Assembly (NCBI GenBank): GCA_024704765.1
Contig: JAKMXF010000266.1
Location: forward strand, 186,001 to 250,000
DNA length: 64,000 bases
Direction of reading: 5' to 3'
Source: Oopsacas minuta
Lineage: Eukaryota; Animalia; Porifera
Shown here: positions 10,276 to 43,027 of the stretch, in pieces
Layout: each line of letters begins with the position of its first letter
Numbering within the stretch: the first letter of the stretch is position 1
Made by a program: the position numbers and the translations under genes
Notes under the pieces: generated by a model
The model's database searches: none
The model's input: only the letters and a program-made list of their open reading frames with translations
Told to the model about the DNA's origin: nothing

Positions 10276-13200
10276 ATGTCAGATCTCATCCTTCCACTGA
10301 CTCCACTTTCTGATGTCCGTCGCGATCCTGAATACTTTGTCAAACCATTGACTCCCAGTGATAATCAACCTAATCCGATTACAGATATTTTAGTTATTCA
10401 TACTGCCGAGACAACTGAACTCCCACCAGCTAGTACCCCTACAGAATCAACAGCTACTGTCATTCTACAAGCACAAGATCCTGATATAAATAACGACTAT
10501 CATTGTTCAGATGAACATGTACAATTACCTTTGAAACGAGGAATTGACAGTGAAAGCGATACTTCCAACAAAAAATTGAAATTACAACATCCTCGTAGTC
10601 CACCCCATGAGCTACTTTTCTACAACAATATCTCTGGAAATAAAATGCGAATAAACTCACTATCTTATGCGACATCACCACTACATCACAATTCTAGGAA
10701 AAGTTTTACAGATTATCCCATCGAACATCTCAATTCTTCTTCCACAAGGAAGCCAGGCCGACCTTTAGGTAGCCTTAATTCTAAATCAAATAATCATCTA
10801 CACCTACCATTGGCTATTACCCCAACAGACGAGCACAATTTGAAACGAGGCCCAGGTAGGCCTAGGAAAATTTCCTTAGCCCACAGTCCTATTAGTTACG
10901 AAGCGAATAAACCAAAGAATCATCGCGGCCGCGGCCGTCCAAGACTGAACGCCAACAAATGCCGAACCCCTTCTAATAGCACAACTGCTTCGGTCCCTTA
11001 CGAGATCGGCAGTCTAGTCTGGGGTAAGATTAAGAGTTGTGAATGGTGGCCTGGGATGATTATCGCTCCCACCGTAATAGGTAAAACACATACTCCTATA
11101 GGATGTCAATGGATTACATGGCATGGAGAATACCAATACTCAGATGTTTTATATAAAAATATAAAACATATTACAAATTTCCTACAACTGTTTACTCCAT
11201 TGAGTGCTGCTAACTCAAACTATTGCGAGGCTATTTTCAAATGTATTAATATTGCGAAAAATCGAACTGAACTTCATAAATCAAAGTTAGCAGATAAGCA
11301 AGAATATGATTTCTCTGTTCCTGCTAATTTTGAGGATTTATTGAAAGATCGTAAGGATAAACAGAGAGAAATTAGAACTTTATCCAGTTTAACTCAAGAA
11401 CAACAGAATAAGCTAGCCTGGGCACTCAAGGGATTTCCTCCTTATGGTTTAGCCGGGCTGGCTACACGTTGTGAGGATGAATTAAGCCCTTATGATCCTT
11501 GCATACAAATGATCGATTCTGGCAGTGAGAATGATTCAATTGAAGAACTTGTAGTTATGGATATGAGCCGGTATGAAGAAGGACAATCATATGGATTTCC
11601 TAATAGAAATATTCCACAAGAATCAAAAACTGAAAAAGATAGAAAAAATAATCAGATGAATGTTGAACTCCTAAGACAGGGCCAAATTCAACTTCAACAT
11701 TTCTGCCTTGGCTGTCGCAAGTAAGTTTCAATTCATTACAAAAGCTAAAATTGGATAAATTACAAAAATACGATTTCAATAAGATAGCATATGTTCCATA
11801 GACCAAAAATTGCTTTTTATTCATTTCTTTTCATTGTATGCGAATTACGTATCATTATGTAATCAATAAATTTACTCGTTATCTATTGTCCAACAAATCT
11901 AATTTATGTATAACATCAAGTTATTAAGCTCCAAATGAACTAATTGAAGTATAATTTGCACTTAAGTAAGAACGTAACTTTTTGATCGAATTATGAATGA
12001 ATGTGTTTGTGTATATTCCTAGAATTGACAACATTATTGTTTGCAAATGTGTGTATTCTTTGGAACTGATTGAACCCATTTATTCTGTCTATGTCGTTAA
12101 TACCTTAGCACTCAAATTGCCTTTGAAATATATACATAAGTCCAATTTACTGATAGTTATTGTTTATTAAAATAATTATAAGAAGATGGAATGTTGAGAA
12201 ACTGGATTAATTAATGTTTCAATGAGTTAATTATCCCGTAATATAATTAATTATATATGGCTTATTGTCAGGCTGTACTTCAATATTGATGGATCATTCT
12301 GTTAATTTCTGATTAAAATTCTCAATAAATTTTAATAAATGAGAATATTAATTAAAATTAGTTTGAAATTTTATATTTATTATATTTAGGAATGATGAGG
12401 ACCTTAAGGAGCATCCCTTGATTGAAGGTGGGTTTTGTGATAATTGTTTCCTAGAATTTCGAGCTTGTTTCTACTTGTTTGATGAGAATGGCGAGCAAGA
12501 ATATTGTTCTATTTGTGCTGGCGGTGATAATGTTGTTATTTGTAATAACTCTTCATGTTTCTCATTCTGTCAGAGTTGTATTCAAGATTTAATTTCTAGT
12601 GAAGAAAAGGAAGCAATTATTAATCGAACAAATTGGCATTGCTTTCTCTGTCAACAAGCAGAATCTCAGGATAATCTGGAACTTAATTTTCTCAAAGTTC
12701 GACCAGATTGGAATGAGAGATTACACGCGGTATTTAACAGTACACAAAAGAAGCACATGTTTAGTTACAGAGCAAACTCTATACCACCACCTGTTCCCGC
12801 GAAATTTCGCACTTCCATTCGCGTACTCGGACTATTTGATGGAATATCAACAAGTATGCTAGCACTTAAAGAACTTGGATTTGAAATAGATTACTACATA
12901 GCTTCAGAGATCAACACCAATGCACATAAAGTCGTGCATCTTAACCACATGAGTGTAAAAAATGTTGGCGATATCAAGAAAATTAATCTCAGGGACATTC
13001 AAAACTGGGGGCCATTTGATCTCGTCTGCGGTGGACCTCCTTCACAAGATATTTCTCTAGACAATCCGAACAGAAAAGGTTTATATGACCAGAAGGGCAC
13101 TGGTCCGCTATTCTTTGAATTTTATCGAATATTGAATTATTGTCTGCCGAAGAAAGGCGATGATCGACCATTTTTCTGGTTTTTCGAAACAACAGCTTCA

Positions 13201-13689
13201 ATGAAACAGGAAGATAGAGACACTATTTCGCGGTTTTTAGCCCTTGAACCGATTATTATTAACATGAAAGATTTCTCGGCTCTAGAAGACTGCAGTTATT
13301 TCTGGAGTAATTTGCCTGGACTGAATAGGCCCAAAGTTGCCGGACACAGTGCTAAACTTCGTCTCCAAGACTGCCTTACTAAAGGAATGGGCCGGATTGC
13401 AAAAGTCGAAAAGGTAAAACCATCTGCTTACAAGGGCAGTAAATCAAGAGAACACATTTATCCAGTGAGAGTTAGAATCCCAGAATCCGACCCTGAAGAT
13501 GATAACCTATTCATAAACGAACTGGAAGAAATACACAGTTTACCAAAGCACTATACAGACGTTGCCAATAATAGCATTGAGGATCGACAAACTCTAGTCG
13601 AAAATTCTTGGTGTGTTCCAGCTATCAAATACATCCTTGCCCCTCTCAAAGGCTATTTTAAATCTAATCCCCCATTAATCGCTCAATAA
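10276..13689 (+). CDS. DNMT3: DNMT3-family protein (AT-hooks, PWWP, ADD, C5-methyltransferase fold), predicted catalytically inactive; exons 10276-11720, 12390-13689, about 914 aa
   Basis: The 669-nt intron 11721..12389 (GTAAGT...TTTAG) joins CLGCRK|NDEDLKEHPLIEGGFCDNC in frame. PWWP: LVWGKIKSCEWWPG. ADD: YCSICAGG...WHCFLC. MTase: IRVLGLFDGIS, ASEI, WGPFDLVCGGPPSQDIS, RPFFWFFETT, YFWSNLPG, SWCVPAIKYILAPLKGYF. Confidence 0.93.
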
Positions 13690-13974: not shown

Positions 13975-14814
13975 TTGAATGATTACTTTTCCATTCCAAG
14001 CCTCATGCAGGTTGGAAAGCACGGCAGTGCTCCGTGTGAGTTTGATCATCCCCGTGCAATGAGGATCGATAAGCTAACAGGACATGTATACATTATTGAT
14101 ACGAACAACAGTCGTATACAAGTATGGGATGAAAATCTAGACTATCTCACTCAATTTGGTAAAGGTATACTCCATTATCCTCGGGCTATAACTATAATCG
14201 ATGGAAACATATTTGTAACTGACTTTTTCAAAGATTTTCTATATAAATTCAGTCTACCCAATTATGTTCTGATCAAATCGAAACTGCAAGACAAACCCCT
14301 ACCAAAGCTGCATAACCCTACAGCTATTGATGATGAAAACAATGAACTATTTGTATTAGAAGCAGATAAGCGGAGAATCCTTGTATTCACCGAAAACCTT
14401 GAATTTTTGAGATCTCTAGCCAAAGGTGTAATCAACGTTGCTTTTGATCTACAAGTTAAGCAAGGTATAATTCATGTATTAGAGGTGGACACAAATTTAA
14501 TACAATTATTAAATTCACAAAACGGTCAGCTGATTGCATCAGTTTTGACTAATCATAATTCTATGTCCTTTTACAATGCTTGCCATTTTTCCCTTAATCC
14601 TGAAACCAATCAATACTATATTACAGATTGGAAACTAAATAAAGTTAAAATAATATCAGGTACTGGTGCATTCATTCGTATAATAGATACGTCATATTAT
14701 CAGTGCCTACAACCACGAGGGATCGTTTCTTACCCCAACAAGGATATTATTATCACCTTCCAGGAGGGAAAAAACGCTCTGGCTAAGTTACCAACAGTAT
14801 TCTCCACCGATTAG
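13975..14814 (+). CDS. NHL-repeat beta-propeller protein
   Basis: NHL-type repeats: GKHGSAPCEFDHPRAMRID...VYIIDTNNSRIQVWD, GKGILHYPRAITI, LHNPTAID, LQPRGIV. Start uncertain (first in-frame ATG is at 14005; an upstream exon is possible). Confidence 0.75.
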   Translation: MNDYFSIPSLMQVGKHGSAPCEFDHPRAMRIDKLTGHVYIIDTNNSRIQVWDENLDYLTQFGKGILHYPRAITIIDGNIFVTDFFKDFLYKFSLPNYVLIKSKLQDKPLPKLHNPTAIDDENNELFVLEADKRRILVFTENLEFLRSLAKGVINVAFDLQVKQGIIHVLEVDTNLIQLLNSQNGQLIASVLTNHNSMSFYNACHFSLNPETNQYYITDWKLNKVKIISGTGAFIRIIDTSYYQCLQPRGIVSYPNKDIIITFQEGKNALAKLPTVFSTD

Positions 14815-14959
14815 TTCACTTTGTATTACTTACTATTTGAATCACTAATATTTGCTAGTATGTTTCACTATTGCTCTATGACATATCTTTCAATTTATCA
14901 ATGATTTTACATAGCTATTTATATCATTTATCGTTTTGTTGATTAGTTTAATATTCAAG

Positions 14960-17900
14960 ATGTTAGAGAGTGTAATAGCATACATCCTACGGAGTTATCT
15001 AGGGGAATACCTTGAAAATGTAGCAACAGACCAGCTCAGTTTCTTGCTATTAAGTGGCTGCGTAGAAATCGAGAATCTCCCAGTAAAAACTGATGGTATA
15101 CGAAAACTTCGATTGCCAATAGGGATAAAGGGTGGATTTGTTAGCAAATTGAAACTAAAGATTCCATTGAGTGCTATGAAGTCTCAACCTTGGGAAGTAG
15201 TTATACAAGGACTATATGTTATAATTGAGCCTGAGGAATTAGCTAAAATAAATGAAGAAGATGAAATCCAGTTTGAGAAAGCTAACAAAATGAAGAGACT
15301 CAAAAAAATGGAAGAAAGTTGGAAGGAAGAACAAAAACAACAGAATTCTGACGGATCATGGACTTCCAAACTTTTTGCTACAATTTTAGAAAACTTGCAG
15401 GTTAGCATAGAACAAGTACATATACGTTATGAAGAGCGAAATTCCGCAGATTTGCCTTATTCGTTAGGTGTGAGGATAGCTAAGTTAGCTGCACATTCTA
15501 CCGATGAAAACTGGAATCAGAACTTCACATCAAATCGTGCTAAATCATGGAAATTAGTTGAGTTGACTAACCTTGAAGTTTACACTGATAACATATCTCA
15601 TCATAATATCACCTTCCTACCATTAGATCTTCCTCATATAATGGATTCGTTGGGGCTAATTCAGGATTCAAATATTCCCTATAAAGGTCCTGGTAAATGC
15701 TCACATCATGACAAACTATACAGCTTCAGTAGTCTGCTAGAACCTGTATCTTGCAGGGCTAAGGTCATCCGAAATCGCAACCCACATCCATTGCAAATCG
15801 ATAATGGGCCTCGATACCAACTATACATTGAGCTTCCTAACGTTAAAATGTCTCTTAGCAAACTCCAATATCAAAGCTTTATAGGAACAGGCAATGCATT
15901 TGATATGTATTATAGATCTATAGCTGTAAGGAAATGGAGACCAGATGTACCGGTTAAAGAAAATCCCAGAGCTTGGTGGCATTTTGCAGTTAAAGTTCAT
16001 CAAACTCGAATTTCTGAGCGTAATTACAGGAAAAGTTGGGAATTTATTCTAAATCGAGTCTCTACAATTATTTTCTACACAAAAACTTATAAACAATATT
16101 TACTAGGATCTGTTTGGTTGGATTCGACTCAACAATCCAAGTTAGCTGCGATAGAAGACGAATTATCCTATGACGAGATATCTATACTAAGACGCATTGT
16201 GATGTCACAGGTCGAGGAGATATTATTAGCTGACGGCTCTAACTCTGGTTCGGTTTACAGTAACTACGCGTCATATTGGAGCTCCTGGCTTCCGTCAAAC
16301 TGGGGTGGAGCACCAACACTATCTGAAGCACCTTCAAAGGCCGCAAGTCCAGATCAAATTTCTAGTGAACTACCAAACTTTTCTCGTTCAGAATTCGAAG
16401 AGGAATTAGATGAATTCCTAGAACTAGACTCCCAAACCTCGAATAGCTTTCTATTTCGTGATCACCAATTCGCTAGTGCATGTTTCTCCATGCAAGAGGG
16501 CTCTCTATCCTTATACGACCCTTCTAATACAATACAAGGTATAATTGATATGAATTTCAGTCATCTAAAGCTTGTAATGGCTGTAAGACCTAGGATTAAC
16601 TACTACAGATTTGATTTATCACTCGCATCTATACAGATCCTTGACAAACACCATTTGACTTCTTTTTTCCCTGTTTTGGTTGGACCAATTCGAACTAAAT
16701 CCTGCTCTGCTTCTGAACTATTTTCACTATGTATTGTGAAGAGAAAATCTAAGAAATTCGCGGATTTAAGTATATCAGGCCGTTCCCAACCGCTTGAAGC
16801 AATATGCAACATGAATATAGTTAGTCTGCTACAGGAATTCTTCAAACTACCATTTATACCGAGCGGATCAAACCTTGAGGAGAATTTGACTCATATAATG
16901 CGTGAAAAGATAAAAGCTCTAAAGTCATACACTATGAAGGAAATACGGCCTGTTATTGCTGAGGCTCTACAAGATGACAGATGGTGGAGTTCTAAACATC
17001 TCAATCTTGATCTAGAGATATCAGCTCCTCTATTCGTACTCCCAGAAGATTTCTGGTTGGAAGAGAGCAGAGCTATCATTATCGATCTTGGGCTATTCTC
17101 TTTGAAAACGCTTCAAGAAAATAATGTTGTATCTTCCTCCATGGAGCTTGATAATGAATCAGATGATGACTTCGGAACTCCCGTCGGGACCATAACTCCA
17201 CAAGAACTACCCACATCGCCTGCTAATAAGACTGATGCATTTGAGGAATATTTTACAAAAGTAGTATTGAATACACTATACGATCGTTATCAGCTAGATG
17301 TTAAGAATCTACAAATCCTCGTTACTAATAATTATAATTCAGAATCTTGCAAACTAGCTTACAACCAATCTTCTACTCCCTTACACGTTCTCGACAAGTT
17401 AACGGTTAGTCTACAGCTGTGTAGGAGGCTGAGATTCACATGTGATCCTTCTGAGTCTAATATTGCTATTACCGGGGCGTTACCCAGGCTAGATATCCAT
17501 ATTGACGAGGCAAAGTTCAATACTATTCTACGCATCCAGGAGAATTTCATGAAAACATTAATAAATAATCCGAGAAAGCATTCTACCACTGTTGTAACGA
17601 TTCCTAAGATCACAAGCCATGTTGACTGCTCGCCATCAAAGCAAATGAGTACGAGTATCCTATGGGTTCAAGATCAGAATTATAGTTGGGATGTTGAGAA
17701 GAAAAACTTTCTCATGGAGACGAAGCTACTTGATGCTAGCTTCACTCTCCAAGAGGTTACACTATCATTTTCTCATCACAATAGAACTATTATACAACTA
17801 CGTGTACCTGGAATTCAACTTACTCATATACAACGTCCTTACGACTATAACCAGTCGCTTTCTATTCAGGATGTTTTCGTAGCAGATGTATTGCAAAGAT

Positions 17901-20900
17901 TTGGTACACAGTATGAATTATTGATTTATAGCCAAGGTAGAGAGAAATACTACAGTGAAGAGAATGGAAACTTAATTTACTCGTCTAGCATTTCACATAT
18001 TGATAAGAGTGTCTCAAATGAAATGTTCTACTCTATTGCACAAGATAAAGTCTGTGAGTCGAATGCCTTACTTAAATTGGACAGGCAAGTTATTTTTAAA
18101 GAGTCTCCGAACTCAAAATACCCTTATGACATAGTGAAGATAAACGCTGCATTTACTTCACTGGATATTATAGCAAATCAAGAGACCCTTGTAGAATTGT
18201 TAGCTTTTTTCAATTCTCTACCAATCCAAAATATCAACAAACAACCAATTCATATACAAGATACGCAAGTTGTGGCTCAAACTCAACCAGATCCTGACCA
18301 AACCCTGACAGAAATGTCTGCAAAGTTCCAATGTTTAACTGCTAAATTTGTATGCAGTGAGGGTCCTAACGATTTAAAAGAGGTCGGAATTATAAGAGGA
18401 TACGGATTGAACCTGGAATTAGTTGCTCATGAAGAAATCAGTATGACTGGACATTTGAGAGGTATTTCTCTAGAGAGTATCATGGAAAATGACGTGAATC
18501 ATAAAAGATTGTTGAGTGTGGGACAGTTAGATCAAAGTAGTTCTGAGAACAATATTGAGAATGCATTCAATTTCAAAGTTCTCTATAAATCACTTTCAAA
18601 ACAGCTTGCACTTGATTTTGAGTTGGCTTCTGTTCATTATACACATTCCTCGATTTTCCTTTCAAGTGTACAACAATGTTTCTCTGAATTTCAATACTAC
18701 TTCACCAGAGCACGTGAATCTTTGGAATCTGCAGCCAAAGACATGGCTTATTCTCTATTCCACAAAGTGGAAAGTCTAGAACCTCTTTCTCCTGAGAACA
18801 CTCCAACGAACGTGTTTGTTGATAACATCCAGATATCATATAATATTCTAGTGAATGCTCCTACATTACAACTTGAAAATCAAGAAAATTGTGCAGATAA
18901 ATTCATTTTCAATCTTGGTGAGATCACTATCACAAATCGGTCTGCTAGCAATAACAATCCAAACTTCGAACATATAATTATATCTGTTCGCAATGTATTC
19001 ATGCTAGCAAAGATACAGAATCAATCGTATCGGATATTGGAGAATACTAACAGCAAAATATCTGTTGTTCGAAAACTCAACACGAGTGTTTCTATGCTTG
19101 AATGTGAATTCTTGTCCGAAATTCCAATCCCAGACTTCAATATATCACCTCAAGTCGAGTTGGTGATATTTTCAAACTTTGATGAAGATATTCAAGTAAC
19201 TCTTCACAAAATGTGTTTTGATACGTTAATGGAAATCCTCCAACAAAATTCAAACCCAAGCAAAACTCTTTTAACCGCCAAATCAGTTTCAGAATCTCAA
19301 ATACTCGGATCTGATACCGTCATTGAAGATGAAGATTTTAAATCCATCTTCTTTTGGGCGGGTTGTCAAATACACAATATAACATTAACAATCTCACAAG
19401 ACATTGGCTTGGAAACTAAGAAAATAGTTGCATTTTCAACAAGCGACTTTTCAGCTTCTATATATCAAGAACAACCCTACCTATACACTATAGATACTAA
19501 ACTAGGCGGAGTACGGGGTTATGACCTATTGAACGACAAGAAAAGGACATTTCTGGTTACGTCATACCTACAAGATTACACTACATACCCCGAGGCTTTC
19601 TGCCAGTACTCAACTCTACCGGAAACTATCTCGTATAAATCACCGTTGAGGGCCTACGAACTGAGTCTAAACGAAATAAACATTAGCTCACATAAACCAG
19701 AGCAACCTCCTTTAAAAACGCAAGATTTAGTTTCTACAAAGATTACTCTCGTTGATTCCAACCATCCAGAGTATTCTAATGTATATCAGGATATTCCTAC
19801 ACACGCTACCATCAATATGAATCACATCCATATAATAATAAATCTACAAACTTGGGTTCTATTGCTTGATTTCTTTGATATTACACCGCATAATGATAAT
19901 CTAATAACTCCACTACCTTCTGTTATCAAATCTCCAATTTTATCTCCTCAGCCTCTCATCCCATTCAAGCCTCTATCTTCCCTCAGTCCGTTGAGTAGCC
20001 AGGTATTCACAGAATATTCGATTCCGCCGCTGCCATTACGCGACCCCGATGAAGATGAGATTATATCAATCCCAGCTTCTGCCTGTAGCTCAGTCAGATC
20101 AAACTCTATTCCTCTCAATAACAGAAGTAAATTCTCTATAATGGTAGATGTCTCTATCAACTCTCTTATCGCTATATTCAATAAATCAATCTACCCATTA
20201 ACTTGTAACTCAGCTACTGGCTTTAAATCCTCTATCAAAATGGAGAAAGGAGATGTTAATATTGTGGGTGAGCTAGGTAAAGCTAGTCTAATTGATTTAT
20301 CCCCACATGGTGAGTTGTACAGGGAAAAGTTTGTCACTCATGGCGAAAATGCATTATACTTTGAATTTTTCAAATACGGAGAATCAGACAATAATCTTGT
20401 GAGAGAATTTGACATGCGAGCGAATTTCAGAATGGCTTCAGTCCGGTATGTTCACACGAAGAGGTTTATGAATGAGAATCTAGCGTTCTGTCAGCATTTC
20501 TTCCAATTAATCGATGCCTTCCAAAGAATGAAAGCTAATTCAAATGGAAACGTGTCATTTTCAGGACCTGAGAGACATCCTCGTATCAAGTTAGACGTTT
20601 CAGCCGCTAGTCCAATTATTTTCATACCCTCTCATGGTCTCTCTCCTTACCTATTTATTGGAGAACTTGGACACATCACTGTGTCAAACGTCTTCCTGTT
20701 TGATGGCAGAAAAGGTACTTGGACGCAGCGAAACAGAAACTCCCCTTATCGTTCACCTGAAAAATCATACAAAGTTTCTCCTCTACATATTAAGGAACAT
20801 TCTCTGATTGAAGACTCTCAGTACAAAGGACCTTGTCTTCTTGACCTCATGCGGATTGAGCTGCAGGGTAATGACGTATTCACAGCTATGTTTGATGTTG

Positions 20901-23900
20901 AAAACAGTGTATTCGTAAGAGAAGATTCTAAAATATTGAAAGAAAAACTAAATTATAGGGTAGTATTCGAGCATAACCTTCATATGCCAATGTGTCATAC
21001 AGTACCGAATTTCAGGTTTGAGATTTACATTTCAGATTCACACTGTATGCTAGACAAGAAACAAATGGACGCTTTCAAAACCTTTCTTGGCAAGAACTTG
21101 GGGGAAGATTTAGGTGAATTTGAACGTCCTACGAGTGTCATTAGAGATCCGATTGTTTTTGAGGATTTTGAAGATAGATGGGTTGAACTGAGTTTCTGTT
21201 TCAATTTTCAGCATGTATGTTTGGAGTTTGTTTCCTCGCGTGCTACACACAAAGACGATATCGACCAGTTTCTCTCTCGATTCTATATGCACAATACCAC
21301 TCTACAAATCGAATTGTATTCTGATTCTACCAAAGATATTGATTTTATAAGCCGAGAGATGTCAATAGTTGATGTACGGTACGATGATTACGTTGAGTCA
21401 CAAAAACCTTCTATTTATAGAAAAGTTCTTCTAACCAGGAATGCTTTCGAAAACGACCCTTCTACTTCTAGTTTGCAGGTCGAGGTTCATGTAAAGCTAA
21501 ATCCTCAACGAATGGAGTATACCATCATTTTGAATAATTTGAGGATGATTTTTATGATGGACTTGGCTCTTTTGTGTTGGAGTTTTGTTGCTGATAGTAG
21601 TGAAGAGTTTCATCATTTATTCGATATTCCGAAATTGCCCAAACACTCCACCCTCTCATCTTCCATGCAATCTCCTCCATCACAGAAGAGCAGAGATCTC
21701 CAGATTAAAGTTAGCGTTACAGAAACAGATTTTGTCATAATAGAAGACTTGACGTCACCTGACTCGCAAGCTCTCGTTTGTAAAGGAATAACTGTAATGA
21801 CATTCACTAGCAACCCCACATATGAATTTACCTGGAATATGCATGGAGTTGAGTTGTTTTCCTGTTGCTTTGCAAGCGAAGAAGAAACAGCTCTTTCAAT
21901 TATCGACCCTCTTAATATAACTATAGAAATACCTAGGAATCATAAATTGTGTCATTCTTACCCGCTCCATATTGAAGTACAGACAGTAAATACTAGATTA
22001 TCCTATAACGACATGAAACTATTTGCTGCTATTTTCAAGTCAATTTCTAGCATACTTCATGTCCATCAAATGTCTTCAAGTAGTTATGAAACTCCTGAGA
22101 ATACAATGGCGGAATCTAATGTAATAGATTCTAGTACAAGGCCAGATATTTTCGACTCGTATGTAATGGTTGAAAAAGTCCCTAAAGCTAAGTTGAGAGA
22201 GAAATCAAATGAAAAGAAGAGCGAGCATAGTACATTTGGTGAGATAACAGTGCATATTAATGAGTTTAAGCTTGTTCTGATAGACGATTGTGGAAATTGT
22301 GATATTCCATTGGGAGAACTGAACGTGGATCATTTATCAGTTATCCAATCGCTTTATCCCCCGTACATCGGACATTCTAATGTAAAACTTGCTACCAACT
22401 ATTATAATCGTAACAATTCCGCGTGGGAGCCTTTAGTAGAGCCGTTTAAGGTTACAAGTGAATGGAAGAGAGAGATTAAAAGTAAACTAGCGAGGGGTGA
22501 GGAAGATGTTCGATATCCGTATTATACGTATACACTTCTGAGTGATGAAATTATATTGTTAAATTTTACAAGCTCATTTTTGGATATTCTCAAGGACACG
22601 CAGAGCAGTTGGGGAGAAGATCTCACTCAATCAATTGACCAACAGCCTCTAGGTCTGCCAATGACTGGCTCAATGTCAAATCAAGGCAAACTACAATCAC
22701 ACGGCTCTGCTACTCAATTGAGTTCCCTAGCTGTACGTAGTATATCCGGGTTTAATTTCCGTAAGAGAAAACCTTTCATCCCATTTAGACTGGAGAATAA
22801 CACAGGGCTACCGTTAAGATTTGCTACACTCACTAAAAACCCGTATAAAGTAAGTCATCATAGTTCAATGTTGTACGAACCATCCATGCATTATCTCAAC
22901 TCAGAATTGAGAGGTTGGCTAGATGTGCCAGCTGGTAGCAGCTTGTCATTTGCGTTCGAGAAGAAGAGTAAAATACGTCATCAACATTTACAGATAAAAA
23001 CGATTCATTTGTTAGTTGTTGAAGTTGAGGGTTGGAAAGAGACTAAAACCCCTGTATCAGCTGATCAAGTCGGAATCGTATTTCGTGATCTAAAACCCCG
23101 AAATACTTCTTATCCATCTGTTAAACTGATATTCTCAATCAAACTAGATGGAGCTCAAAAAGTTATAAATGTTCGCACACCAATCGCAGTAAAGAATGAA
23201 TTGAAATTTGAAATGGAAATAAAGTTAACCGGTGAGCTACCGAACCAAACCACACACGAATTTTCGCTAAAACCGGATTGTTTCGCCTCAATCCCATTAA
23301 ACCGGCAGCAATCGAATATATTTATACGTCCCAGAGGTTGGGGAGCTCAATACCCCTCGCATCCTCTCAACTTAGACGCAGTTGAAAGATCTGACCTTTG
23401 GAGAGTGTGTGTGCCTTTTGGTCCGAAAGACCACAAAGCTCATAAACAAAGTTTCATTTACACTTATTCAGTGACAGAGATTAGGAAAGCTGGTCTAACC
23501 TCGACTCCTCTCGTTTTCAAAACAATTATGCTTACACATCCGTTTATAATAGAGAACTTACTCCCTCATGATATTTCTGTAGAAATATGTGACTTGAACC
23601 AGACTAAGAATATTAAGCCAGGTGCTAGCATGCCTATAATCAGCTTCACTCCCTCGAGAGGATTCTCCTTCTATCTGCATATGGACAATTTCCAGCCGAG
23701 CCACAAGATTAACATATCTCCATTCTACAGTGAGTCCCCTACAGTTCAACACGAAATTATCAGAGACGTTGATAATCGGCAGTTACAGTTAACTGTTTCA
23801 GTGTCTGTGGAGAAATGTCCCGCAAGGAAAATATCAATAATGGCTCCATACTGGTTAATAAATAGATCAAATCTACCGCTAATATTCCGAGAAGACAACA

Positions 23901-26900
23901 GTGAGTCAGAAGCTGCTGGACAATTCCAAGCCCACGAGACAGCACGTTCTATTATAGCATTACCGTTTTCGTTTATTAGCTCAGATGCAACTGTGGCCCA
24001 ATGTCAAATGCGATTAGGAAAATCTCCTCTAATACCGGATGGAAGGCCGAGTTGGAGCGGAAACTTTAGACTACACAGTCAAGGGGGTGTTGTCCTACTT
24101 TACGTACTAGTATCTTCCAATACTGTCCCTATTGAGTACCAATTGGCTGTAGAAATAACTAAAGGTTCTGGAAAATATAAAGATATTTCAATGGTTACTT
24201 TTATTAATAGATTCCAATTAGAGAATCTTACTTCACTTCCTATACGTTACTTACAGAACTGTCAATTTGAGAATGATCATGAATTAATTGAGTTTACCGA
24301 TAGTACAAAACAAATAATCATGCCAAATTCTATCACATCATTTAATTGGCCGAGGTCAGATCGAGATAATTTCCTGAGAGTAAAATATGAGGAAATCGCA
24401 GGTGTATTTTGGTCTGGCCCTTTCAAAGTAGTAGAAGAAGATACTTTCGTTTTGAGCCTGAAATCGAAAGAAGACAATTTATATTTCATTCGTGTTAACA
24501 TCCGTCAGAAAAACTATGCCTACATCATTCGTTTCTCAGATACACAGAATATTCCACCGCCATTTATCATTCAAAATTATTCCCAAGTACCAATCTATTA
24601 CATACAGCGTTCCATAGCTCTGTCACACAAACACTGTATCAAGCCAGGTCAAAGCAAGGCATACGCTTGGGATGAAATTCTCTCTGAACAGAAGTTAAAG
24701 ATATTTGTAGATGACATTGATCAGAATGTAATCTATGATCCTGTAATCCAGAGTGAACAACACAAGCTAGGTTATGAAAATTTCTTCTATATAGCGCTAT
24801 ATGACACATTTTGTAAAGAATCACCTATTCCTGGTGAACAACTTGTACTCAGCATTGAACCGAAAACACATAAAGTTATATTCACTAGAAAATCCAATCA
24901 CCATTCCCAACAATGGAGAATGACAGGAGCTGGAAGAATACAGCATGTAAGCTCACTGAAACAAGGTTACAACTTAGTACTGGATATTAATGATAGTCGG
25001 AAATCAGGTATATTATCTGCCGCGTGTATACCATTAGTTCTGAAGGATAAAGATGAAAAGCGTGACCTTACACAGAAGTGGGAATTTAACGATGGACTTT
25101 TGACCTTAGCTAATCCACCACATCAGTGTGTTTGCGCTAAAATGGTATCAGTTAGTGTTCTGCCATACGACGCGGTTCTTGTAGCTAATCCAAAGGCTGT
25201 ACACTCTCTTAAGGAAGGATTGTCACTGCCACCAAATCACCACATACGTACACTCAAGTGTAAGCCAGGATCTGGCATGTTATCAGTTAGAATCTCAACC
25301 AAAGGCCCGTCTAACATTATACGGATAACAGACAATAATCCAATATACCACCATTTGAATATTTCCCCTCATAACTGGAACAAGCCAGAATCTAAAGTGA
25401 ATTCTATTATGAAACTGCTAATTGATGAAGAATCCCTTGGATCACCATATGAATTTTTATTCATTTGTGAGTCAATGAAAGGCATTGGCCTTTCTCTCAT
25501 TAGCAATGGAGAAGAGTTGACATATAATTCATTCGATAATGTCATAGCTCTATACAAACGTACGAATAAATCTGAAATATTTGAAATTAATATCGCGGAT
25601 GTTCAGGTTGATGATCAAACAGCTGGCATACACACTAATACAATATTTTACGTGGAAGATAGCGAGGATAATCGCAAACAAGCGTTCAGCATTTCCTTAG
25701 AAAGATTATTCGATAGTTCACCTGGATTCTACTTTTTTAAATTCTTACACATTCAGTTGAAAAATTATGTGTTAACAATCGATGAAAGAATTCTGTTTAA
25801 ACTCTTACTACTCTTCGGTCTTGGTCAGATGTCATCTAGTGACCAACAGCCTTCTAGTGACCTTATTAGGACATTCCCCATTGAAAACCCTTCGGACACA
25901 AAATATTTCTATTTTAGAGACATTTTCATTGACTCTACCAAGCTAAATACCAGCGTAATCACTGTATCAAACTTATCACCTCAACTACAGGCAATAAAGT
26001 CACAACTGGGCATAAAGATGGTTAAATTCCAAGCTACCATCTCGTTGACAGACTACCAACGAAAACACAATTTTGATCGCTTGCAAGAACATATAGCCTC
26101 TATCTGCTATCATTACAAAACTTGTTTAACAGGTCAAGCTCTCAAAGTTCTAGGTTCAGTGGATTTCTTAGGGAATCCAGTCGGTTTATTTAATGACCTT
26201 ACCAAGGGTATAACTGGGCTGATAATGTTCCGTCATGGATTCAGCGGTCTGTTGCGAGACGTTACTCACGGACTGTCTGATTCCACAAGCAAGCTTACTG
26301 GTAGTGCCGGTAACTTGGTTTCATATATGACATTTGATAAACAGTACCAGAAGGAGAGAGAAGATCTGAATCCTGTTTTGGCTAGCTCTGCACAGCACTT
26401 AGGAGCAGGTAAGCTTTGCATAGTCTATTATTTTCTCAGGGTGTATTATCTCGACATTACGTTTCAAAATACATCTGTGTAACCTCCTAATATACGTTTT
26501 CTGCTACGCTGGTGGAGGTTACGTATATTTATACGTTGGTGTTTGTGCAGGATAAAATGTGCTTTTTATAAGTGATTTTTGCTAGGTTTAAACAGCTTTG
26601 CATCTGGTATGTTCGGAGGCATAACTTCAATCATAACTTCTCCATATCAAGGAGCTCAGGATGGACTACTTGGATTTATGACTGGAGTAGGTAAGGGAGT
26701 AGTAGGAACAATAGCTAAACCAATAGCAGGTACACTAGACCTAGTTAGTAATACATCAGCTGCTTTGAGGGTGCAGACACTCTCATCTAATGAACCACAC
26801 GAGAGAAAACGTCTTCCTAGATGTTGTGCAGGAGCAGGAGGGGTCCTCCCAATATATACAGGTAGGAGTGCGAAAGGAGTCCATTATTTCAGCCAGTTTT

Positions 26901-29318: not shown

Positions 29319-30464
29319 ATGACATCATCATACGATACTATAGTGGTGGGTGCAGGTATAGAGGGATCAGCTACTGCTATGTACTTGGCTATCAAAGGCA
29401 GTAGAACTCTGTTATTGGAACAATTCGAGCTGGAGCACACACGAGGAAGTTCCCACGGAGGTAGTAGGATAATTAGGTACAATTATCCTGAGTCATTCTA
29501 TGTTGAAATGATGAAGAAAGCATATCCGTTATGGAGTGATATTGAGAAGCAGGCTGGAGTTAAATTAGTTGAAAAGTGTGGTGGTATTACCTTTGGGCAT
29601 CGTGATCACGTGGAAATAAGGAACGGCATTGAATCTCTGTCGAGAGAGAATATTCCCCATTCTGTAATCGAGAGTGACGAAATTCAGAAAAGGTATCCAT
29701 TCTTGAATCTACCAGATGATTTTGTAGTCGTAGCAGAACCTGATTCAGGTTATGTATATGCTAGAAAATCCTTGAAAGCAATGCAGAAAATATTCGTATC
29801 TAATGGAGGAACTATTCTTGATATGCATAAAGTAGTTGGTATTACTCCAGGGAGAATAATCAGGGTAAAAACACTGAAAGGTTCCTTTCAATGTAAATCA
29901 TTGATTATATGTGCTGGTCCATGGACTAACAATGTATTAACAGACACTGGGCTAAAACTTCCTATTACACCTCATAGAGTTTGCATTTCTTTCTATAAAC
30001 AAACAGATTCTGCATTTGATAATATTCCTATCTTTATTTACAGAGCTCAGAATGATCCCGGCTTCCATTACTATGGCATGCCGGATTCTGAATATCCGGG
30101 TTTATTCAAAATTTGTGCTCACAATGGTGTGGCATTGTCCAACCCAGATGATCGTGACACGAATAGTGATTATTCATTCCTTGAATATACAACTAATTTC
30201 ATTGCCTCAAAACTTCGTGGAGTTTCATCTAAGCCTAGTATCCTTGAGACTTGTATTTATACGCTTGCACCAGATCATAATCCATTTCTTGACAGACATC
30301 CTCATTTTCATAATATTGTAATTGGAGCAGGATTCTCTGGTCACGGATTTAAGCTTGCTCCTGTTGTTGGTTCTATTCTCTCAGGCTTAGCTTTACATGA
30401 AGAGATCGATTACGATATTTCTCATTTCAAGATTTCACGTTTCAAATCAAATTCTAAACTATGA
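29319..30464 (+). CDS. PIPOX: Peroxisomal sarcosine/pipecolate oxidase, copy 1
   Basis: FAD motif IVVGAGIEG, RGSSHGGSRIIR, flavinylation Cys in ETCIY, GAGFSGHGFKLAPVVG, C-terminal PTS1 SKL. Confidence 0.92.
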   Translation: MTSSYDTIVVGAGIEGSATAMYLAIKGSRTLLLEQFELEHTRGSSHGGSRIIRYNYPESFYVEMMKKAYPLWSDIEKQAGVKLVEKCGGITFGHRDHVEIRNGIESLSRENIPHSVIESDEIQKRYPFLNLPDDFVVVAEPDSGYVYARKSLKAMQKIFVSNGGTILDMHKVVGITPGRIIRVKTLKGSFQCKSLIICAGPWTNNVLTDTGLKLPITPHRVCISFYKQTDSAFDNIPIFIYRAQNDPGFHYYGMPDSEYPGLFKICAHNGVALSNPDDRDTNSDYSFLEYTTNFIASKLRGVSSKPSILETCIYTLAPDHNPFLDRHPHFHNIVIGAGFSGHGFKLAPVVGSILSGLALHEEIDYDISHFKISRFKSNSKL

Positions 30465-33646: not shown

Positions 33647-33709
33647 TAATTGTTGATAATTCTTATTTATTTATTCCAACTATTATATTAAGTGTTCCTT
33701 ACTAGATCT

Positions 33710-42232: not shown

Positions 42233-43027
42233 ATGTCAAAATGCGAAGATGTTCTCTCAAAAAATGTTGTTGAGGCAGACAAATCAGCGAAAGTACAAAG
42301 AAAGCGTAAGTCCTGTGCTGATGAAGATATGAGTGACCATGAAGACGAAGTGGAAAAGGTTGAAAATCGTCCCAAAATGTTGACGCAGACAAAACCATGT
42401 CAAAATGTGGAGATATTCCATCAGAAAATGTTGACGCAGACAAAACTACGGGAAAAAAACGTAAGTTCTGTACTGATGAAGATATGAGTGACCATGAAGA
42501 CGAAGTGGAAAAGGTTGAATCGTCCCGAAAGAAAGCCAAAATTGAATCTTTTGTGACAGTGTTAGACGGAGGTATGGGAAGAGAATTAGATGTCAACTAT
42601 CCAGATCTAGATTTCAAAGATATTTGGAGTGCTGCGCATTTGCTAAACCAGCCAGGATCTGTCTATCATGCTCATTTGTCATTCATCAGTGCTGGGGCTG
42701 AGGTAATCACAACCAGTAACTATGCTTGTGTCCCAGCTTTCCTTGCAAAAATGGATATCACTGATAAAATGTATGACTTGATAAAAGTTTCAGGAGAGCA
42801 AGCACAAAAGGCTAAAATATCATTTGAAAATTCTTCCAGCATTAGAGTCGCGGGATCAATTCCTCCCTATGGATTCAGTTACATGGGCATGAAGATCCCT
42901 GATAATTCTGAGATTATATCAAGTTACGCTAAGATTGCTATCCATACATTGACAAATTTCTATGCGAGACTATGTCTAGCATTGACGAGGCTGTAACTGC
43001 ACTGAGTGGTGTGCAGACTGCTAAAAA
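42233..43027 (+). pseudogene. Truncated, frameshifted copy of the homocysteine S-methyltransferase gene
   Basis: Near-identical to 48945ff. It has a 10-nt deletion at 42940/42941 (GTGTATTATA, = 49807..49816 of the intact copy), homology ends at ~43027 before the Zn-binding Cys residues, and the start region is duplicated (ATGs at 42233 and 42397). Confidence 0.88.

What the first reader, a model, noticed from the sequence alone, without database searches (positions are those of the whole stretch)
12775..13689. DNMT3 pseudo-methyltransferase: intact gene with most of the catalytic residues replaced
Seen: the ORF is open, correctly spliced and keeps the fold and SAM-binding motif I (LFDGI) and ASE. 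Motif IV reads GGPPSQD (TCA at 13042-13044, two changes from either Cys codon), motif VI reads FETT, motif VIII reads EDCSYFW and motif X reads ENSW. Known: human DNMT3A uses GGSPC710ND, FE756NV, HR790AR792YFW and G890R891SW; the R882-equivalent position here is Ile. Inference: the protein cannot form the covalent cytosine intermediate. It would be a DNMT3L-like or DRM3-like non-catalytic regulator, or a DNA/chromatin-binding scaffold, that arose independently in an early-branching animal and, unlike DNMT3L, kept PWWP. Several coordinated substitutions without frameshift argue for selection on a non-catalytic role rather than decay.
Basis: partly seen in the sequence, partly recalled or inferred. 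Interest (0 to 1): 0.85.

Follow-up and report, generated by a model that had tools for sequence, protein, structure and literature searches.

The report
Catalytically dead DNMT3 of glass sponges
The only DNMT3 DNA-methyltransferase gene I could detect in the glass sponge Oopsacas minuta is intact and strongly conserved across glass sponges, yet it has lost the residues needed to methylate DNA, so it most likely survives as a non-enzymatic chromatin-binding protein.

Summary
The window comes from Oopsacas minuta (Hexactinellida). A two-exon gene (10276-11720 and 12390-13689) encodes a 914-aa PWWP-ADD-MTase protein identical to GenBank KAI6653550.1, which is annotated as 'DNMT3A isoform d'.

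Aligned to solved DNMT3A (E=1.6e-109), four motifs are replaced:
- Motif IV reads GGPPSQD instead of GGSPCND.
- Motif VI reads FETT instead of FENV.
- Motif VIII reads EDCS instead of HRAR.
- Motif X reads ENSW instead of GRSW.

R882 is Ile and V716 is Asp.

Eight syntenic orthologues from other glass-sponge assemblies are all intact, share the intron position, and all lack the cysteine (Ser, Thr or Asn). Selection is strongly purifying: omega is 0.07 for the MTase-like domain, and neutrality is rejected with 2dlnL=957. The clade sits on a long stem branch with short crown branches.

The SAM-binding motifs I-III, both oligomerisation interfaces and all 12 ADD zinc-ligand cysteines are kept. 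Three AT-hook-like motifs were gained. One PWWP cage aromatic is lost.

Homoscleromorph, demosponge and calcareous sponges keep intact motifs. I found no second O. minuta DNMT3, and CpG sites are only about 1.4x hypermutable.

Best reading: a DNMT3-derived pseudoenzyme that acts as a chromatin reader or scaffold. Whether an active DNMT partner or any 5mC exists in glass sponges remains untested.

The parts
10276..11720 (+). Exon 1 (aa 1-481 plus two bases of codon 482). It holds the N-terminal low-complexity region, three AT-hook-like motifs, the PWWP domain, a linker and the first two Cys of the ADD GATA-like finger.
   Evidence: The ORF and GTAAGT donor at 11721 are read from the sequence. 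The spliced product is identical to KAI6653550.1.
10744..10776 (+). AT-hook-like motif 1 (TRKPGRPLGSL, aa 157-167).
   Evidence: The GRP core is conserved in all hexactinellid orthologues and absent from the other sponge and cnidarian DNMT3s examined.
10843..10875 (+). AT-hook-like motif 2 (KRGPGRPRKIS, aa 190-200).
10921..10953 (+). AT-hook-like motif 3 (HRGRGRPRLNA, aa 216-226).
10999..11280 (+). PWWP domain (aa 242-335). The cage reads KSCEWWP...WITWHGE: the first aromatic is replaced by Cys and Asp by Glu.
   Evidence: Pfam PF00855 E=2e-6. PDB DNMT3A and DNMT3B PWWP hits at E=2e-13 and 1e-11.
11721..12389 (+). The single intron (669 nt, GTAAGT...TTTAG, phase 2), which splits the ADD GATA-like zinc finger.
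   Evidence: Position, phase and splice signals are conserved in all 10 orthologous haplotypes.
12390..13689 (+). Exon 2 (aa 482-914 plus the TAA stop). It holds the rest of ADD and the whole MTase-like domain.
12390..12735 (+). ADD domain, main part (the domain begins at 11695 in exon 1). All 12 zinc-ligand Cys are present. The D531-equivalent is Asn (FDENGEQ, 12478-12498).
   Evidence: Pfam PF21255 and PF17980. Alignment to 4u7t. Invariant Cys columns. D531N and F509I.
12814..13659 (+). C5-MTase-like domain (aa 624-905), with the fold retained and the catalytic residues replaced.
   Evidence: PF00145 E=3e-14. Foldseek TM 0.93-0.95 to DNMT3A and DNMT3B catalytic domains. Omega is 0.071.
12832..12852 (+). 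Motif I, LFDGIST (SAM binding), retained. Motif II IASE (12898-12909) and motif III VGDI (12964-12975) are also retained.
   Evidence: All three are invariant in the eight orthologues.
13030..13050 (+). Motif IV, GGPPSQD. Ser (TCA, 13042-13044) replaces the nucleophile Cys710. S708 is Pro and N711 is Gln.
   Evidence: Orthologues have Ser(AGY), Thr(ACC) or Asn(AAT) at this position.
13051..13077 (+). Catalytic loop, ISLDNPNRK. Asp replaces the DNA-intercalating V716 (Glu in the other seven species).
   Evidence: The role of V716 is from my own knowledge of the DNMT3A-DNA structures.
13111..13134 (+). FFEFYRIL, the FF (tetramer) interface helix, retained. SRFL (13228-13239, the F772 equivalent) is also retained.
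   Evidence: The interface definition is from PMC5062992.
13183..13194 (+). Motif VI, FETT. Glu is kept; Asn757 and Val758 are both Thr.
   Evidence: L003 still has ENT.
13285..13305 (+). Motif VIII, EDCSYFW. R790 is Asp (invariant in the clade). R792 is Ser (Asn or Arg in others).
   Evidence: Both Arg are essential according to PMC4802922.
13417..13452 (+). Target-recognition loop, KPSAYKGSKSRE. It has a 3-residue deletion relative to DNMT3A, T835 is Tyr, and a basic residue is kept at the R836 position.
13546..13611 (+). RD-interface and motif X region, KHYTDVANNSIEDRQTLVENSW. H873, D876 and R885 are kept. R882 is Ile. G890-R891 is Glu-Asn.

Best explanation
This is the glass-sponge orthologue of the de novo DNA methyltransferase DNMT3. 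In the stem lineage of Hexactinellida its cytosine-methylating chemistry was dismantled:
- The Cys nucleophile became Ser, Thr or Asn.
- ENV became ETT.
- The first motif VIII Arg became Asp.
- Motif X Gly-Arg became Glu-Asn or Glu-Ser.
- The DNA-intercalating Val became Asp or Glu.
- R882 became Ile.

Three of these changes place acidic side chains in the former DNA and cytosine cleft.

Since then the whole protein has been held under strong purifying selection. It therefore works as a pseudoenzyme, most likely a chromatin reader or scaffold, along these lines:
- It reads histone tails through an intact ADD and a modified PWWP.
- It binds AT-rich DNA through three newly acquired AT-hook-like motifs rather than through the catalytic cleft.
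- It self-associates, or binds partners, through the conserved FF and RD interfaces.
- It probably still binds SAM or SAH, because motifs I-III are intact.

Shown: loss of the catalytic residues, retention of the fold, selection, and restriction to the hexactinellid clade. Inferred: inactivity, AT-hook DNA binding, oligomerisation, SAM binding and the chromatin role.
For: - Motif replacements against solved DNMT3A.
- The same replacements occur in eight intact, syntenic orthologues with a conserved intron.
- Pairwise dN/dS for the MTase-like domain is 0.04-0.09 at dS 0.45-0.9.
- The codon model gives omega 0.071 (MTase), 0.044 (ADD) and 0.071 (PWWP). Omega=1 is rejected with 2dlnL 957, 519 and 307.
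- The stem branch is 1.09 substitutions per site against crown branches of 0.006-0.2.
- 19 of 95 otherwise conserved columns are changed, concentrated in motifs IV, VI, VIII, X and the TRD. F640, D641, G642, E664, D686, F732, F772, D876 and R885 are kept.
- The former Cys codon has turned over among AGY, ACC, AAT and TCA, and the R792 site among R, S and N. That is relaxed identity at former catalytic sites.
- Fold confidence and TM-scores.
- Motif VIII Arg substitutions, including Arg to Glu, abolish Dnmt3a activity, base flipping and covalent complex formation (PMC4802922).
- The AT-hook-like motifs are specific to hexactinellids.
- Other sponge classes keep intact motifs.
- No second O. minuta DNMT3 appears among the best 120 profile hits, nor in the 238-756 aa search.
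- CpG transitions are only 1.4x non-CpG, with transversions equally raised. CpG o/e is 0.72, without a low mode, across nine genes.
Against: - No biochemical assay has been done.
- From my own recollection of Reither et al. 2003 (not retrieved here), Dnmt3a Cys-to-Ala mutants keep some activity, so Cys loss alone would not prove inactivity. The argument rests on the combined loss, above all R790D.
- Retention of a complete SAM-binding motif set is unusual for a dead MTase and could mean residual or altered catalysis.
- I could not search the O. minuta genome for DNMT1, UHRF1, MBD or TET, so a cofactor role is not excluded.
- The CpG tests cover only about 13 kb of mostly coding sequence.
- Expression rests on the public RNA-seq-guided annotation. 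I did not see reads.
- The species identities of the ENA orthologues are unknown, apart from a Vazella-like link.
Confidence: 0.6

Rival explanations
1. It is a DNMT3L- or DNMT3B3-like accessory subunit. It is itself inactive, but it docks through the FF and/or RD interface onto a catalytically active DNMT encoded elsewhere in the glass-sponge genome. It then targets or stimulates that enzyme on chromatin.
For: - FF-interface residues (FFEFYR, SRFL) and the RD residues H873, D876 and R885 are conserved.
- Inactive DNMT3 family members act this way in mammals (PMC5062992).
- A dead-MTase, PWWP-bearing DNMT3.1 coexists with an intact DNMT3.2 in Daphnia (PMC8016896).
- Other Cys-less DNMT3 paralogues in Ptychodera, Dreissena, Liolophura and Blattella come from phyla that have active DNMT3s.
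Against: - No intact DNMT3 from O. minuta or from any hexactinellid assembly appeared in three protein searches covering 238-1144 aa.
- The one intact ENA candidate I checked is a calcareous sponge.
- The gene is the orthologue, with conserved synteny across the class, not an extra paralogue.
- CpG sites show no strong hypermutability.
- DNMT1 could not be searched for.
Confidence: 0.22
2. It is still a methyltransferase, using the retained SAM pocket with a non-canonical mechanism or a different substrate. Examples would be non-covalent C5 methylation, or RNA, protein or another base as the target.
For: - Motifs I, II and III, the motif IV Pro and the motif VI Glu are invariant under omega of about 0.07.
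- Other dead DNMT3 paralogues (Ptychodera, Blattella, DNMT3L-like) have lost motif III Asp or more.
- New invariant Cys at the I705-equivalent, and Cys at the A791-equivalent in 6 of 8 species, lie near the old active site.
Against: - R790 is Asp in all eight. Changing that Arg to Ala, Glu or Lys destroys activity and covalent complex formation, and base flipping is undetectable with Ala or Glu (PMC4802922).
- G890E, V716D/E and R882I add acidic or non-basic residues where DNA binds.
- The former nucleophile site varies among Ser, Thr and Asn, and the R792 site among Arg, Ser and Asn. That is not expected for catalytic residues.
- GPP[S/T/N] lacks the aromatic residue of the amino-MTase (D/N/S)PP(Y/F/W) motif, so a switch to N-methylation is not indicated.
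- Cys791 is Gln or Ser in two species.
Confidence: 0.1
3. It is a decaying pseudogene, or the substitutions are assembly or sequencing errors.
For: Many catalytic residues are lost. Nothing else supports this reading.
Against: - The reading frames (898-914 aa in nine of ten haplotypes; L003 resolved only as 660 aa) carry no stop or frameshift in any of ten haplotypes from eight independent assemblies.
- Splice signals are conserved.
- Omega is 0.07-0.11 with neutrality rejected.
- The same substitutions appear in independent PacBio HiFi assemblies.
- The model is identical to the public annotated protein.
Confidence: 0.01

Closest known systems
Vertebrate DNMT3A / DNMT3B (active de novo DNA cytosine-5 methyltransferases)
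   Same: The PWWP-ADD-C5-MTase architecture is the same. Identity is 43-45% over ADD plus MTase, E=1e-109 to 4u7t, and TM is 0.86-0.95. Motifs I-III, the FF and RD interface residues and the ADD zinc ligands are kept.
   Different: The nucleophile Cys, ENV Asn-Val, motif VIII Arg790 (and Arg792 in half the species), motif X Gly-Arg, V716 and R882 are replaced. The TRD loop is 3 residues shorter. A PWWP cage aromatic is lost. D531 is Asn. Three N-terminal AT-hook-like motifs are present.
DNMT3 of the other sponge classes (Oscarella, Corticium, Dysidea, Sycon)
   Same: They are orthologous. They are among the best hits (44-46% identity), and the hexactinellid clade joins Oscarella in the same unresolved part of the DNMT3 tree.
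   Different: Those proteins keep GGSPC[NT][DE], ENV, RxR and the motif X Gly (G[RKQ][AS]W), and have F/Y in the PWWP cage and no GRP motifs. The demosponge and calcareous sponges studied have 5mC methylomes (PMC9246332).
Mammalian DNMT3L
   Same: Both are DNMT3-derived, catalytically dead, ADD-containing proteins that keep the FF interface.
   Different: DNMT3L lacks PWWP, cannot bind AdoMet and lacks the RD interface (PMC5062992). The sponge protein keeps all three. DNMT3L matches the query far more weakly (E=1e-40, covering query residues 7-312 only) and is a vertebrate paralogue, so the two are independent in origin.
DNMT3B3-type inactive isoforms and catalytically inactive DNMT3B functions
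   Same: These are full-length-like inactive DNMT3s that keep PWWP and ADD and act through interfaces and chromatin binding. Structures such as 6pa7 and 9e00 were among the matches. Non-catalytic DNMT3B function is cited in PMC8016896.
   Different: DNMT3B3 is a splice isoform lacking part of the catalytic domain, and it coexists with active enzymes. Here the only gene copy is altered by point substitutions.
Daphnia magna DNMT3.1
   Same: It is an invertebrate DNMT3 with PWWP and a diverged, presumably inactive MTase domain, and it has a demonstrated physiological role (PMC8016896).
   Different: DNMT3.1 lacks five of six MTase motifs and coexists with DNMT3.2, which has all motifs. The sponge protein keeps motifs I-III and the Glu of motif VI, and no intact paralogue was found.
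Plant DRM3
   Same: The analogy is functional only: a catalytically mutated de novo MTase paralogue required for methylation by an active partner (from my own knowledge).
   Different: It belongs to a different lineage of the family, with rearranged motifs, UBA domains and no PWWP or ADD. It was not tested here and is not a relative in any close sense.

Membership tests
DNMT3 family (by descent) | C-terminal C5-MTase fold most similar to DNMT3A/B | tested here: met
   phmmer against the PDB gives E=1.6e-109 to DNMT3A. Foldseek TM is 0.93-0.95 for the catalytic domain.
DNMT3 family (by descent) | ADD (GATA-like plus PHD) zinc-finger domain preceding the MTase domain | tested here: met
   Pfam PF21255 scores 38.3 bits against a 27-bit cut-off. 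PF17980 scores 19.4, below its 26-bit cut-off, because the finger is split by the intron. All zinc-ligand Cys columns are invariant, together with CLGC in exon 1.
DNMT3 family (by descent) | PWWP domain N-terminal to ADD | tested here: met
   PF00855 scores 28.6 bits against a 25.6-bit cut-off. DNMT3A and DNMT3B PWWP structures match at E=2e-13 and 1e-11. The first cage aromatic is replaced by Cys.
DNMT3 family (by descent) | Groups with DNMT3 orthologues of other animals in a tree | tested here: met
   It is a monophyletic hexactinellid clade (SH-aLRT 100) inside the DNMT3 set, next to Oscarella. The exact sister is unresolved.
Active DNA (cytosine-5)-methyltransferase (EC 2.1.1.37), as the public record names it | Motif IV Pro-Cys nucleophile | tested here: not met
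   Ser here; Ser, Thr or Asn in the orthologues.
Active DNA (cytosine-5)-methyltransferase (EC 2.1.1.37), as the public record names it | Motif VI Glu-Asn-Val | tested here: not met
   ETT here; ENT only in L003.
Active DNA (cytosine-5)-methyltransferase (EC 2.1.1.37), as the public record names it | Motif VIII Arg-x-Arg | tested here: not met
   The first Arg is Asp in all eight species. The second Arg is Ser, Asn or Arg. Both are essential according to PMC4802922.
Active DNA (cytosine-5)-methyltransferase (EC 2.1.1.37), as the public record names it | SAM-binding motifs I-III | tested here: met
   FDGI, ASE and GD are invariant. Actual SAM binding was not tested.
Active DNA (cytosine-5)-methyltransferase (EC 2.1.1.37), as the public record names it | Methyl transfer to DNA cytosine C5 | not testable with these tools
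   This needs an enzyme assay.
DNMT3L | No PWWP domain | tested here: not met
   PWWP is present.
DNMT3L | Degenerate SAM-binding motifs (cannot bind AdoMet) | tested here: not met
   Motifs I-III are intact. The DNMT3L property is from PMC5062992.
DNMT3L | FF interface only, RD-interface region absent | tested here: not met
   The C-terminal region with H873, D876 and R885 is present. DNMT3L aligns only to query residues 7-312.
DNMT3L | Stimulates an active DNMT3A/B partner | not testable with these tools
   No partner was found. The genome as a whole was not searchable.
AT-hook DNA-binding motif | Arg-Gly-Arg-Pro core flanked by basic residues | tested here: inconclusive
   HRGRGRPRL fits the core. 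KRGPGRPRK and RKPGRPLG have Pro-Gly-Arg-Pro. All three GRP cores are conserved in seven orthologues. No profile test was done and no DNA-binding data exist.

The most novel reading that the evidence does not exclude
Glass sponges as a class have no de novo (perhaps no) cytosine-methylation machinery. Their sole DNMT3 has been converted into a partner-less, SAM-binding chromatin reader that swapped the catalytic DNA cleft for AT-hooks. That would be a whole animal class retaining a DNMT3 pseudoenzyme for hundreds of millions of years without DNA methylation, showing that DNMT3 has an ancient methylation-independent function.
Probability: 0.35. Interest if true: 0.8.

Novelty: new variant of a known kind. 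Interest (0 to 1): 0.62.

Why it matters
Catalytically dead DNMT3 relatives are known (DNMT3L, DNMT3B3, Daphnia DNMT3.1), but always as extra copies or isoforms beside an active enzyme.

Here the orthologue itself appears to have been converted across an entire early-branching animal class, and no intact DNMT3 copy was found beside it. It keeps the reader domains, the oligomerisation surfaces and the SAM pocket, and it is under strong constraint.

This matters in three ways:
- It gives a natural separation-of-function allele for asking what DNMT3 does apart from methylating DNA.
- It predicts that Hexactinellida, the one sponge class without a methylome, lack de novo methylation or perform it unconventionally.
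- It flags a public annotation (KAI6653550.1 / A0AAV7JXL0, named as an enzyme) that would mislead presence/absence surveys of DNA-methylation machinery.

Tried and rejected
1. Pseudogene or assembly artefact. Rejected because the reading frames are open in ten haplotypes and omega is far below 1.

2. An intact paralogue in glass sponges. I looked in three places:
- Three protein searches gave none.
- The only intact ENA-only candidate I could look up (P0438) is a calcareous-sponge gene: 64% identity to Sycon, GC 45-50%, from a different sample. P0425 was not on record.
- The JGI metagenome scan returned only matches of at most 40% identity covering the MTase domain alone, and no glass-sponge contigs.

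3. Literature. No paper in the library links Hexactinellida, Oopsacas, Aphrocallistes or Vazella with DNMTs or 5mC. Neither genome paper mentions them. The Oopsacas supplements list DNA methylases only for the archaeal symbiont.

4. CpG o/e as a methylation proxy. A value of 0.72 is ambiguous on its own. I therefore added haplotype and three-taxon substitution counts. These argue against strong CpG hypermutability, but they cover only about 13 kb.

5. A switch to amino-methyltransferase chemistry suggested by the new Pro-Pro in motif IV. Rejected because there is no aromatic residue after PP and the next residue varies.

6. A relocated nucleophile (new Cys at the I705 and A791 equivalents). 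Considered unlikely: Cys791 is not conserved and R790 is Asp. It was not tested structurally.

7. Reaching a full-length Vazella transcript for expression evidence. None was listed within the length limits of the searches.

8. The first IQ-TREE omega parsing failed and was redone.


Full report
**What is in the sequence.**
The region lies in an AT-rich (35% GC), gene-dense stretch in which almost all long ORFs are on the + strand. Two ORFs in the same genomic frame, 10276-11724 and 12418-13689, are joined by one intron. The donor GTAAGT starts at 11721, the acceptor TTTAG ends at 12389, and the intron is phase 2. The spliced product is 914 aa.

Pfam finds PWWP in exon 1 and the DNMT3 ADD fingers plus a C5 DNA-methylase domain in exon 2. 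The exon-2 protein matches solved human DNMT3A at E=1.6e-109 over residues 7-423.

**Check of the observation.**
In that alignment the replacements are as follows:
- Motif IV GGSPC710ND is GGPPSQD, with Ser encoded by TCA at 13042-13044.
- Motif VI FE756NV is FETT.
- Motif VIII HR790AR792YFW is EDCSYFW.
- Motif X G890R891SW is ENSW.
- R882 is Ile.

Motif I (LFDGIST), motif II (IASE) and motif III (VGDI) are kept. Residue numbers follow a 912-aa DNMT3A (P0498) whose named residues sit at the human positions.

The fold is also kept. An AlphaFold2 model built on a 58-sequence alignment has pLDDT 89.7 and pTM 0.91. It superposes on DNMT3A 4u7t with TM 0.86-0.89 (rmsd 2.2 Å over ADD plus MTase) and on isolated DNMT3A/B catalytic domains with TM 0.93-0.95.

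**Whose gene it is.**
A neighbouring amino-acid transporter is 78% identical to a transcript of the glass sponge Vazella pourtalesii in EukProt. A profile search then returned a 914-aa protein on a 574,913-bp contig: GenBank KAI6653550.1 / UniProt A0AAV7JXL0, 'DNA (cytosine-5)-methyltransferase 3A isoform d [Oopsacas minuta]'. It is identical over all 914 residues to my spliced model.

The window is therefore from O. minuta (Hexactinellida). Its published genome is 61 Mb, 36% G+C, with 1.59 introns per gene (PMC10280926). The gene is publicly annotated as an enzyme. Neither that paper, its supplements, nor the Aphrocallistes vastus genome paper mentions DNMTs or DNA methylation. No paper in the library links hexactinellids with DNMTs or 5mC.

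**Orthologues.**
Exact-protein look-ups brought in the same locus from seven other assemblies, ten haplotypes in all. Wherever the fetched flanks reach, gene order is the same: fn3 protein, PWWP exon, ADD/MTase exon, NHL protein, VPS13.

In every one of them:
- Exon 1 ends ...C-L-G-C-[RH]-AA|GTAAGT.
- Exon 2 starts after a T-A-G acceptor in the same phase.
- The spliced frame is open. It is 898-914 aa, except that the N-terminus of L003 was not resolved.

The proteins fall into four lineages at 65-90% identity: O. minuta; L004/L008/L009 (Vazella-like); L001/L005/L007; and L003.

All of them lack the cysteine. The codon is AGC or AGT (Ser) in four, ACC (Thr) in two, AAT (Asn) in one and TCA (Ser) in O. 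minuta. The ancestral loss was therefore probably the single step TGY to AGY, followed by further turnover among small polar residues.

The other former catalytic sites behave as follows:

| DNMT3A site | State in the eight orthologues |
|---|---|
| R790 | Asp in all eight |
| G890 | Glu in all eight |
| V716 | Asp or Glu in all eight |
| R882 | Ile in all eight |
| V758 | Thr in all eight |
| N757 | Thr in seven, Asn in L003 |
| R792 | Arg in four, Ser or Asn in four |

The picture is one old inactivation followed by drift at sites that mattered only for catalysis.

**Selection.**
Within-lineage pairs, where dS is 0.45-0.9, give these dN/dS values (Nei-Gojobori with bootstrap):

| Region | Pairwise dN/dS |
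|---|---|
| MTase-like domain | 0.04-0.09 |
| ADD | 0.03-0.05 |
| PWWP | 0.04-0.10 |
| N-terminus | 0.16-0.36 |

A Goldman-Yang codon model on the eight-taxon tree gives these values:

| Region | Omega | 2dlnL against omega=1 |
|---|---|---|
| MTase-like domain | 0.071 | 957 |
| ADD | 0.044 | 519 |
| PWWP | 0.071 | 307 |
| Whole gene | 0.112 | 2301 |

In a protein tree the hexactinellid clade (support 100) hangs on a stem of 1.09 substitutions per site, while its internal and terminal branches are 0.006-0.2. That is a burst of change followed by tight conservation. It is the signature of a functional shift, not of decay.

**What was lost and what was kept.**
Of 95 alignment columns that are at least 90% conserved in 57 other DNMT3s, 76 are unchanged. 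The 19 that are changed in at least seven of eight hexactinellids are F509I, D531N, G646S, S708P, C710S/T/N, N711Q/H, N757T, V758T, D781x, R790D, G796S, T834x, T835Y, S839R, W860F, F868H, G869S, G890E and S894C/P. They cluster in the cytosine pocket, the catalytic loop, the target-recognition loop (which is also three residues shorter) and motif X.

These features are kept:
- the SAM-contact residues of motifs I-III;
- Pro709 and Glu756;
- the FF-interface helix FFEFYR and SRFL(F772);
- the RD-interface residues H873, D876 and R885;
- a basic residue at the R836 position;
- all twelve ADD zinc-ligand cysteines.

Three substitutions (V716D/E, R790D, G890E) put acidic side chains where DNA and the flipped cytosine would lie.

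Biochemistry on mouse Dnmt3a shows that replacing the motif VIII arginines, including Arg to Glu and even Arg to Lys, abolishes methylation and covalent-complex formation. Base flipping is undetectable with Ala or Glu and falls to 16% with Lys (PMC4802922). So inactivity does not rest on the cysteine alone. This matters because, as I recall but did not retrieve, Reither et al. 2003 reported that Dnmt3a Cys mutants keep some activity.

**Reader domains.**
The ADD is intact, but D531 is Asn. D531 is one of the acidic residues that, to my knowledge, contacts both H3K4me0 and, in the autoinhibited state, R790/R792. Its partner R790 is Asp, so both sides of that autoinhibitory contact have changed (role of the ADD from PMC5062992).

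The AF2 model places ADD as in the H3-bound 4u7t arrangement rather than as in the autoinhibited 4u7p (TM 0.86 versus 0.62). I give this little weight.

In the PWWP, the residue before [DS]WWP is Phe or Tyr in every other DNMT3 examined (four sponges, four cnidarians, amphioxus, vertebrates) but Cys in hexactinellids. The following W-F-G-D is W-H-G-E. One wall of the methyl-lysine cage is therefore altered.

N-terminal to the PWWP there are three GRP-core, AT-hook-like motifs (aa 157-167, 190-200 and 216-226). They are conserved in all orthologues with a resolved N-terminus and absent from the other sponge and cnidarian DNMT3s.

**Is there an active partner, and is there 5mC?**
Other sponge classes keep intact motifs: Oscarella pearsei and O. 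lobularis, Corticium, Dysidea and Sycon. Methylomes exist for a demosponge and a calcareous sponge, but not for any glass sponge (PMC9246332).

The searches for an intact glass-sponge DNMT3 gave the following:
- The profile search covered proteins of 360-1144 aa and listed everything down to 498 bits. Intact DNMT3s of other phyla score 498-548 bits. The only O. minuta protein listed is the dead one.
- The earlier search (238-756 aa) found only the three hexactinellid ORFs plus DNMT3s of other animals.
- An intact ENA-only candidate turned out to be calcarean.
- The JGI metagenome scan found no glass-sponge contigs.

I had no means of searching for DNMT1.

As indirect evidence on 5mC:
- CpG o/e is 0.72 in the window (0.59-0.86 per 4 kb, 0.67-0.78 in nine genes), and GpC o/e is 0.98.
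- Between haplotypes, transitions per CpG site are 1.6x those per non-CpG C/G site, but on only 14 events.
- With three-taxon polarisation the ratio is 1.43 (118/688 against 534/4451), and transversions are raised by the same factor.

That is far from the roughly ten-fold excess I know from methylated genomes. However, it covers only about 13 kb of mostly coding DNA. Absence of germline methylation at this locus is therefore likely. Absence genome-wide is only suggested.

**Interpretation.**
The best-supported account is a DNMT3-derived pseudoenzyme fixed in stem Hexactinellida and conserved since as a chromatin-binding module. Histone reading would go through ADD and a modified PWWP. DNA binding would move from the acidified catalytic cleft to the AT-hooks. 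Self-association or partner binding would use the FF and RD interfaces. The retained SAM pocket could be structural or ligand-sensing.

The main rival is a DNMT3L- or DNMT3B3-like accessory role for an active DNMT that I could not find. A smaller possibility is altered catalysis using the intact SAM pocket. Decay and artefact are excluded.

**Comparison with what is known.**
By descent this is a DNMT3: architecture, similarity, tree position and fold were all tested and met. It fails the defining catalytic motifs of an active C5-MTase, so the public enzyme name should not be read as function.

It is not DNMT3L, which lacks PWWP, AdoMet binding and the RD interface (PMC5062992). It differs from Daphnia DNMT3.1, which lacks five of six motifs and has an intact paralogue beside it (PMC8016896).

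Cys-less DNMT3 paralogues also exist, unstudied, in Ptychodera flava (three), Dreissena, Liolophura and Blattella. DNMT3 pseudoenzymes therefore arise recurrently. The distinctive points here are conversion of the orthologue itself across a whole class, with no intact copy found, and retention of SAM motifs, both interfaces and both reader domains, together with the gained AT-hooks.

**Verdict.**
It is a new variant of a known kind, of moderate to high interest. The decisive open questions are whether glass sponges have DNMT1 or any 5mC, and what the protein binds.

Noticed in passing
window 2344-56035: About 25 long ORFs lie on the + strand with very short spacers, for example 46 nt between 33646 and 33692 and 97 nt between 26482 and 26579. 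VPS13 is a single 3848-aa ORF (14936-26482) that seems to continue after a short intron. The layout is operon-like and co-oriented; the A. vastus genome paper's reference list includes work on trans-splicing and operons.
   Followed up: partly
window 29319-30464 and 30934-32076: Two tandem paralogues of an FAD-dependent oxidoreductase (Pfam DAO, E=1e-45 and 1e-42).
   Followed up: no
window 36995-41932 and 43792-48642: Two tandem, single-exon, roughly 1,600-aa URGCP-like GTPase genes (Pfam URGCP_GTPase, E=1e-113 and 1e-121).
   Followed up: no
window 42397-42996 and 48945-50393: One short (199 aa) and one full (482 aa) homocysteine S-methyltransferase ORF follow the two URGCP-like genes, one after each. 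They belong to the methionine/SAM cycle; any link to the SAM-binding pseudo-MTase is pure speculation.
   Followed up: no
window 33692-35218: A fused dTDP-4-dehydrorhamnose 3,5-epimerase plus reductase (RmlC-RmlD type, 508 aa). It is a rhamnose-synthesis enzyme in an animal genome, and its origin was not examined.
   Followed up: no
window 13975-14814 and 32444-33646: Two NHL-repeat proteins. The first is the conserved downstream neighbour of the DNMT3 gene in all glass-sponge loci.
   Followed up: partly
L003 9014-9703: In the most divergent orthologue the exon-1 ORF is only 229 aa and starts inside the PWWP. The N-terminal part (AT-hooks, start of PWWP) was not resolved. This could be an extra intron, a frameshift or a real truncation.
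   Followed up: partly
window 13027-13029 and 13291-13293 (aa 695 and 783): There are new cysteines next to the old active site. The I705-equivalent is Cys in all eight species. The A791-equivalent is Cys in six of eight. Their significance is unknown.
   Followed up: partly
P0319, P0332, P0352 (Ptychodera flava); P0369 (Dreissena); P0380 (Liolophura); P0381 (Blattella): Other DNMT3 paralogues without the catalytic Cys and with degenerate ENV and RxR motifs. Together they show recurrent, mostly undescribed DNMT3 pseudoenzymes across animal phyla.
   Followed up: partly
GenBank KAI6653550.1 / UniProt A0AAV7JXL0 (= window 10276-13689): The public records name this protein as a DNA (cytosine-5)-methyltransferase. 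Presence/absence surveys based on names or domain hits would score glass sponges as DNMT3-positive.
   Followed up: yes
model m4ed4583d9644 against 4u7t and 4u7p: AlphaFold2 places the ADD domain in the histone-bound 'active' arrangement (TM 0.86), not the autoinhibited one (TM 0.62). This fits with both sides of the autoinhibitory contact (D531, R790) having changed, but it may only reflect model bias.
   Followed up: partly
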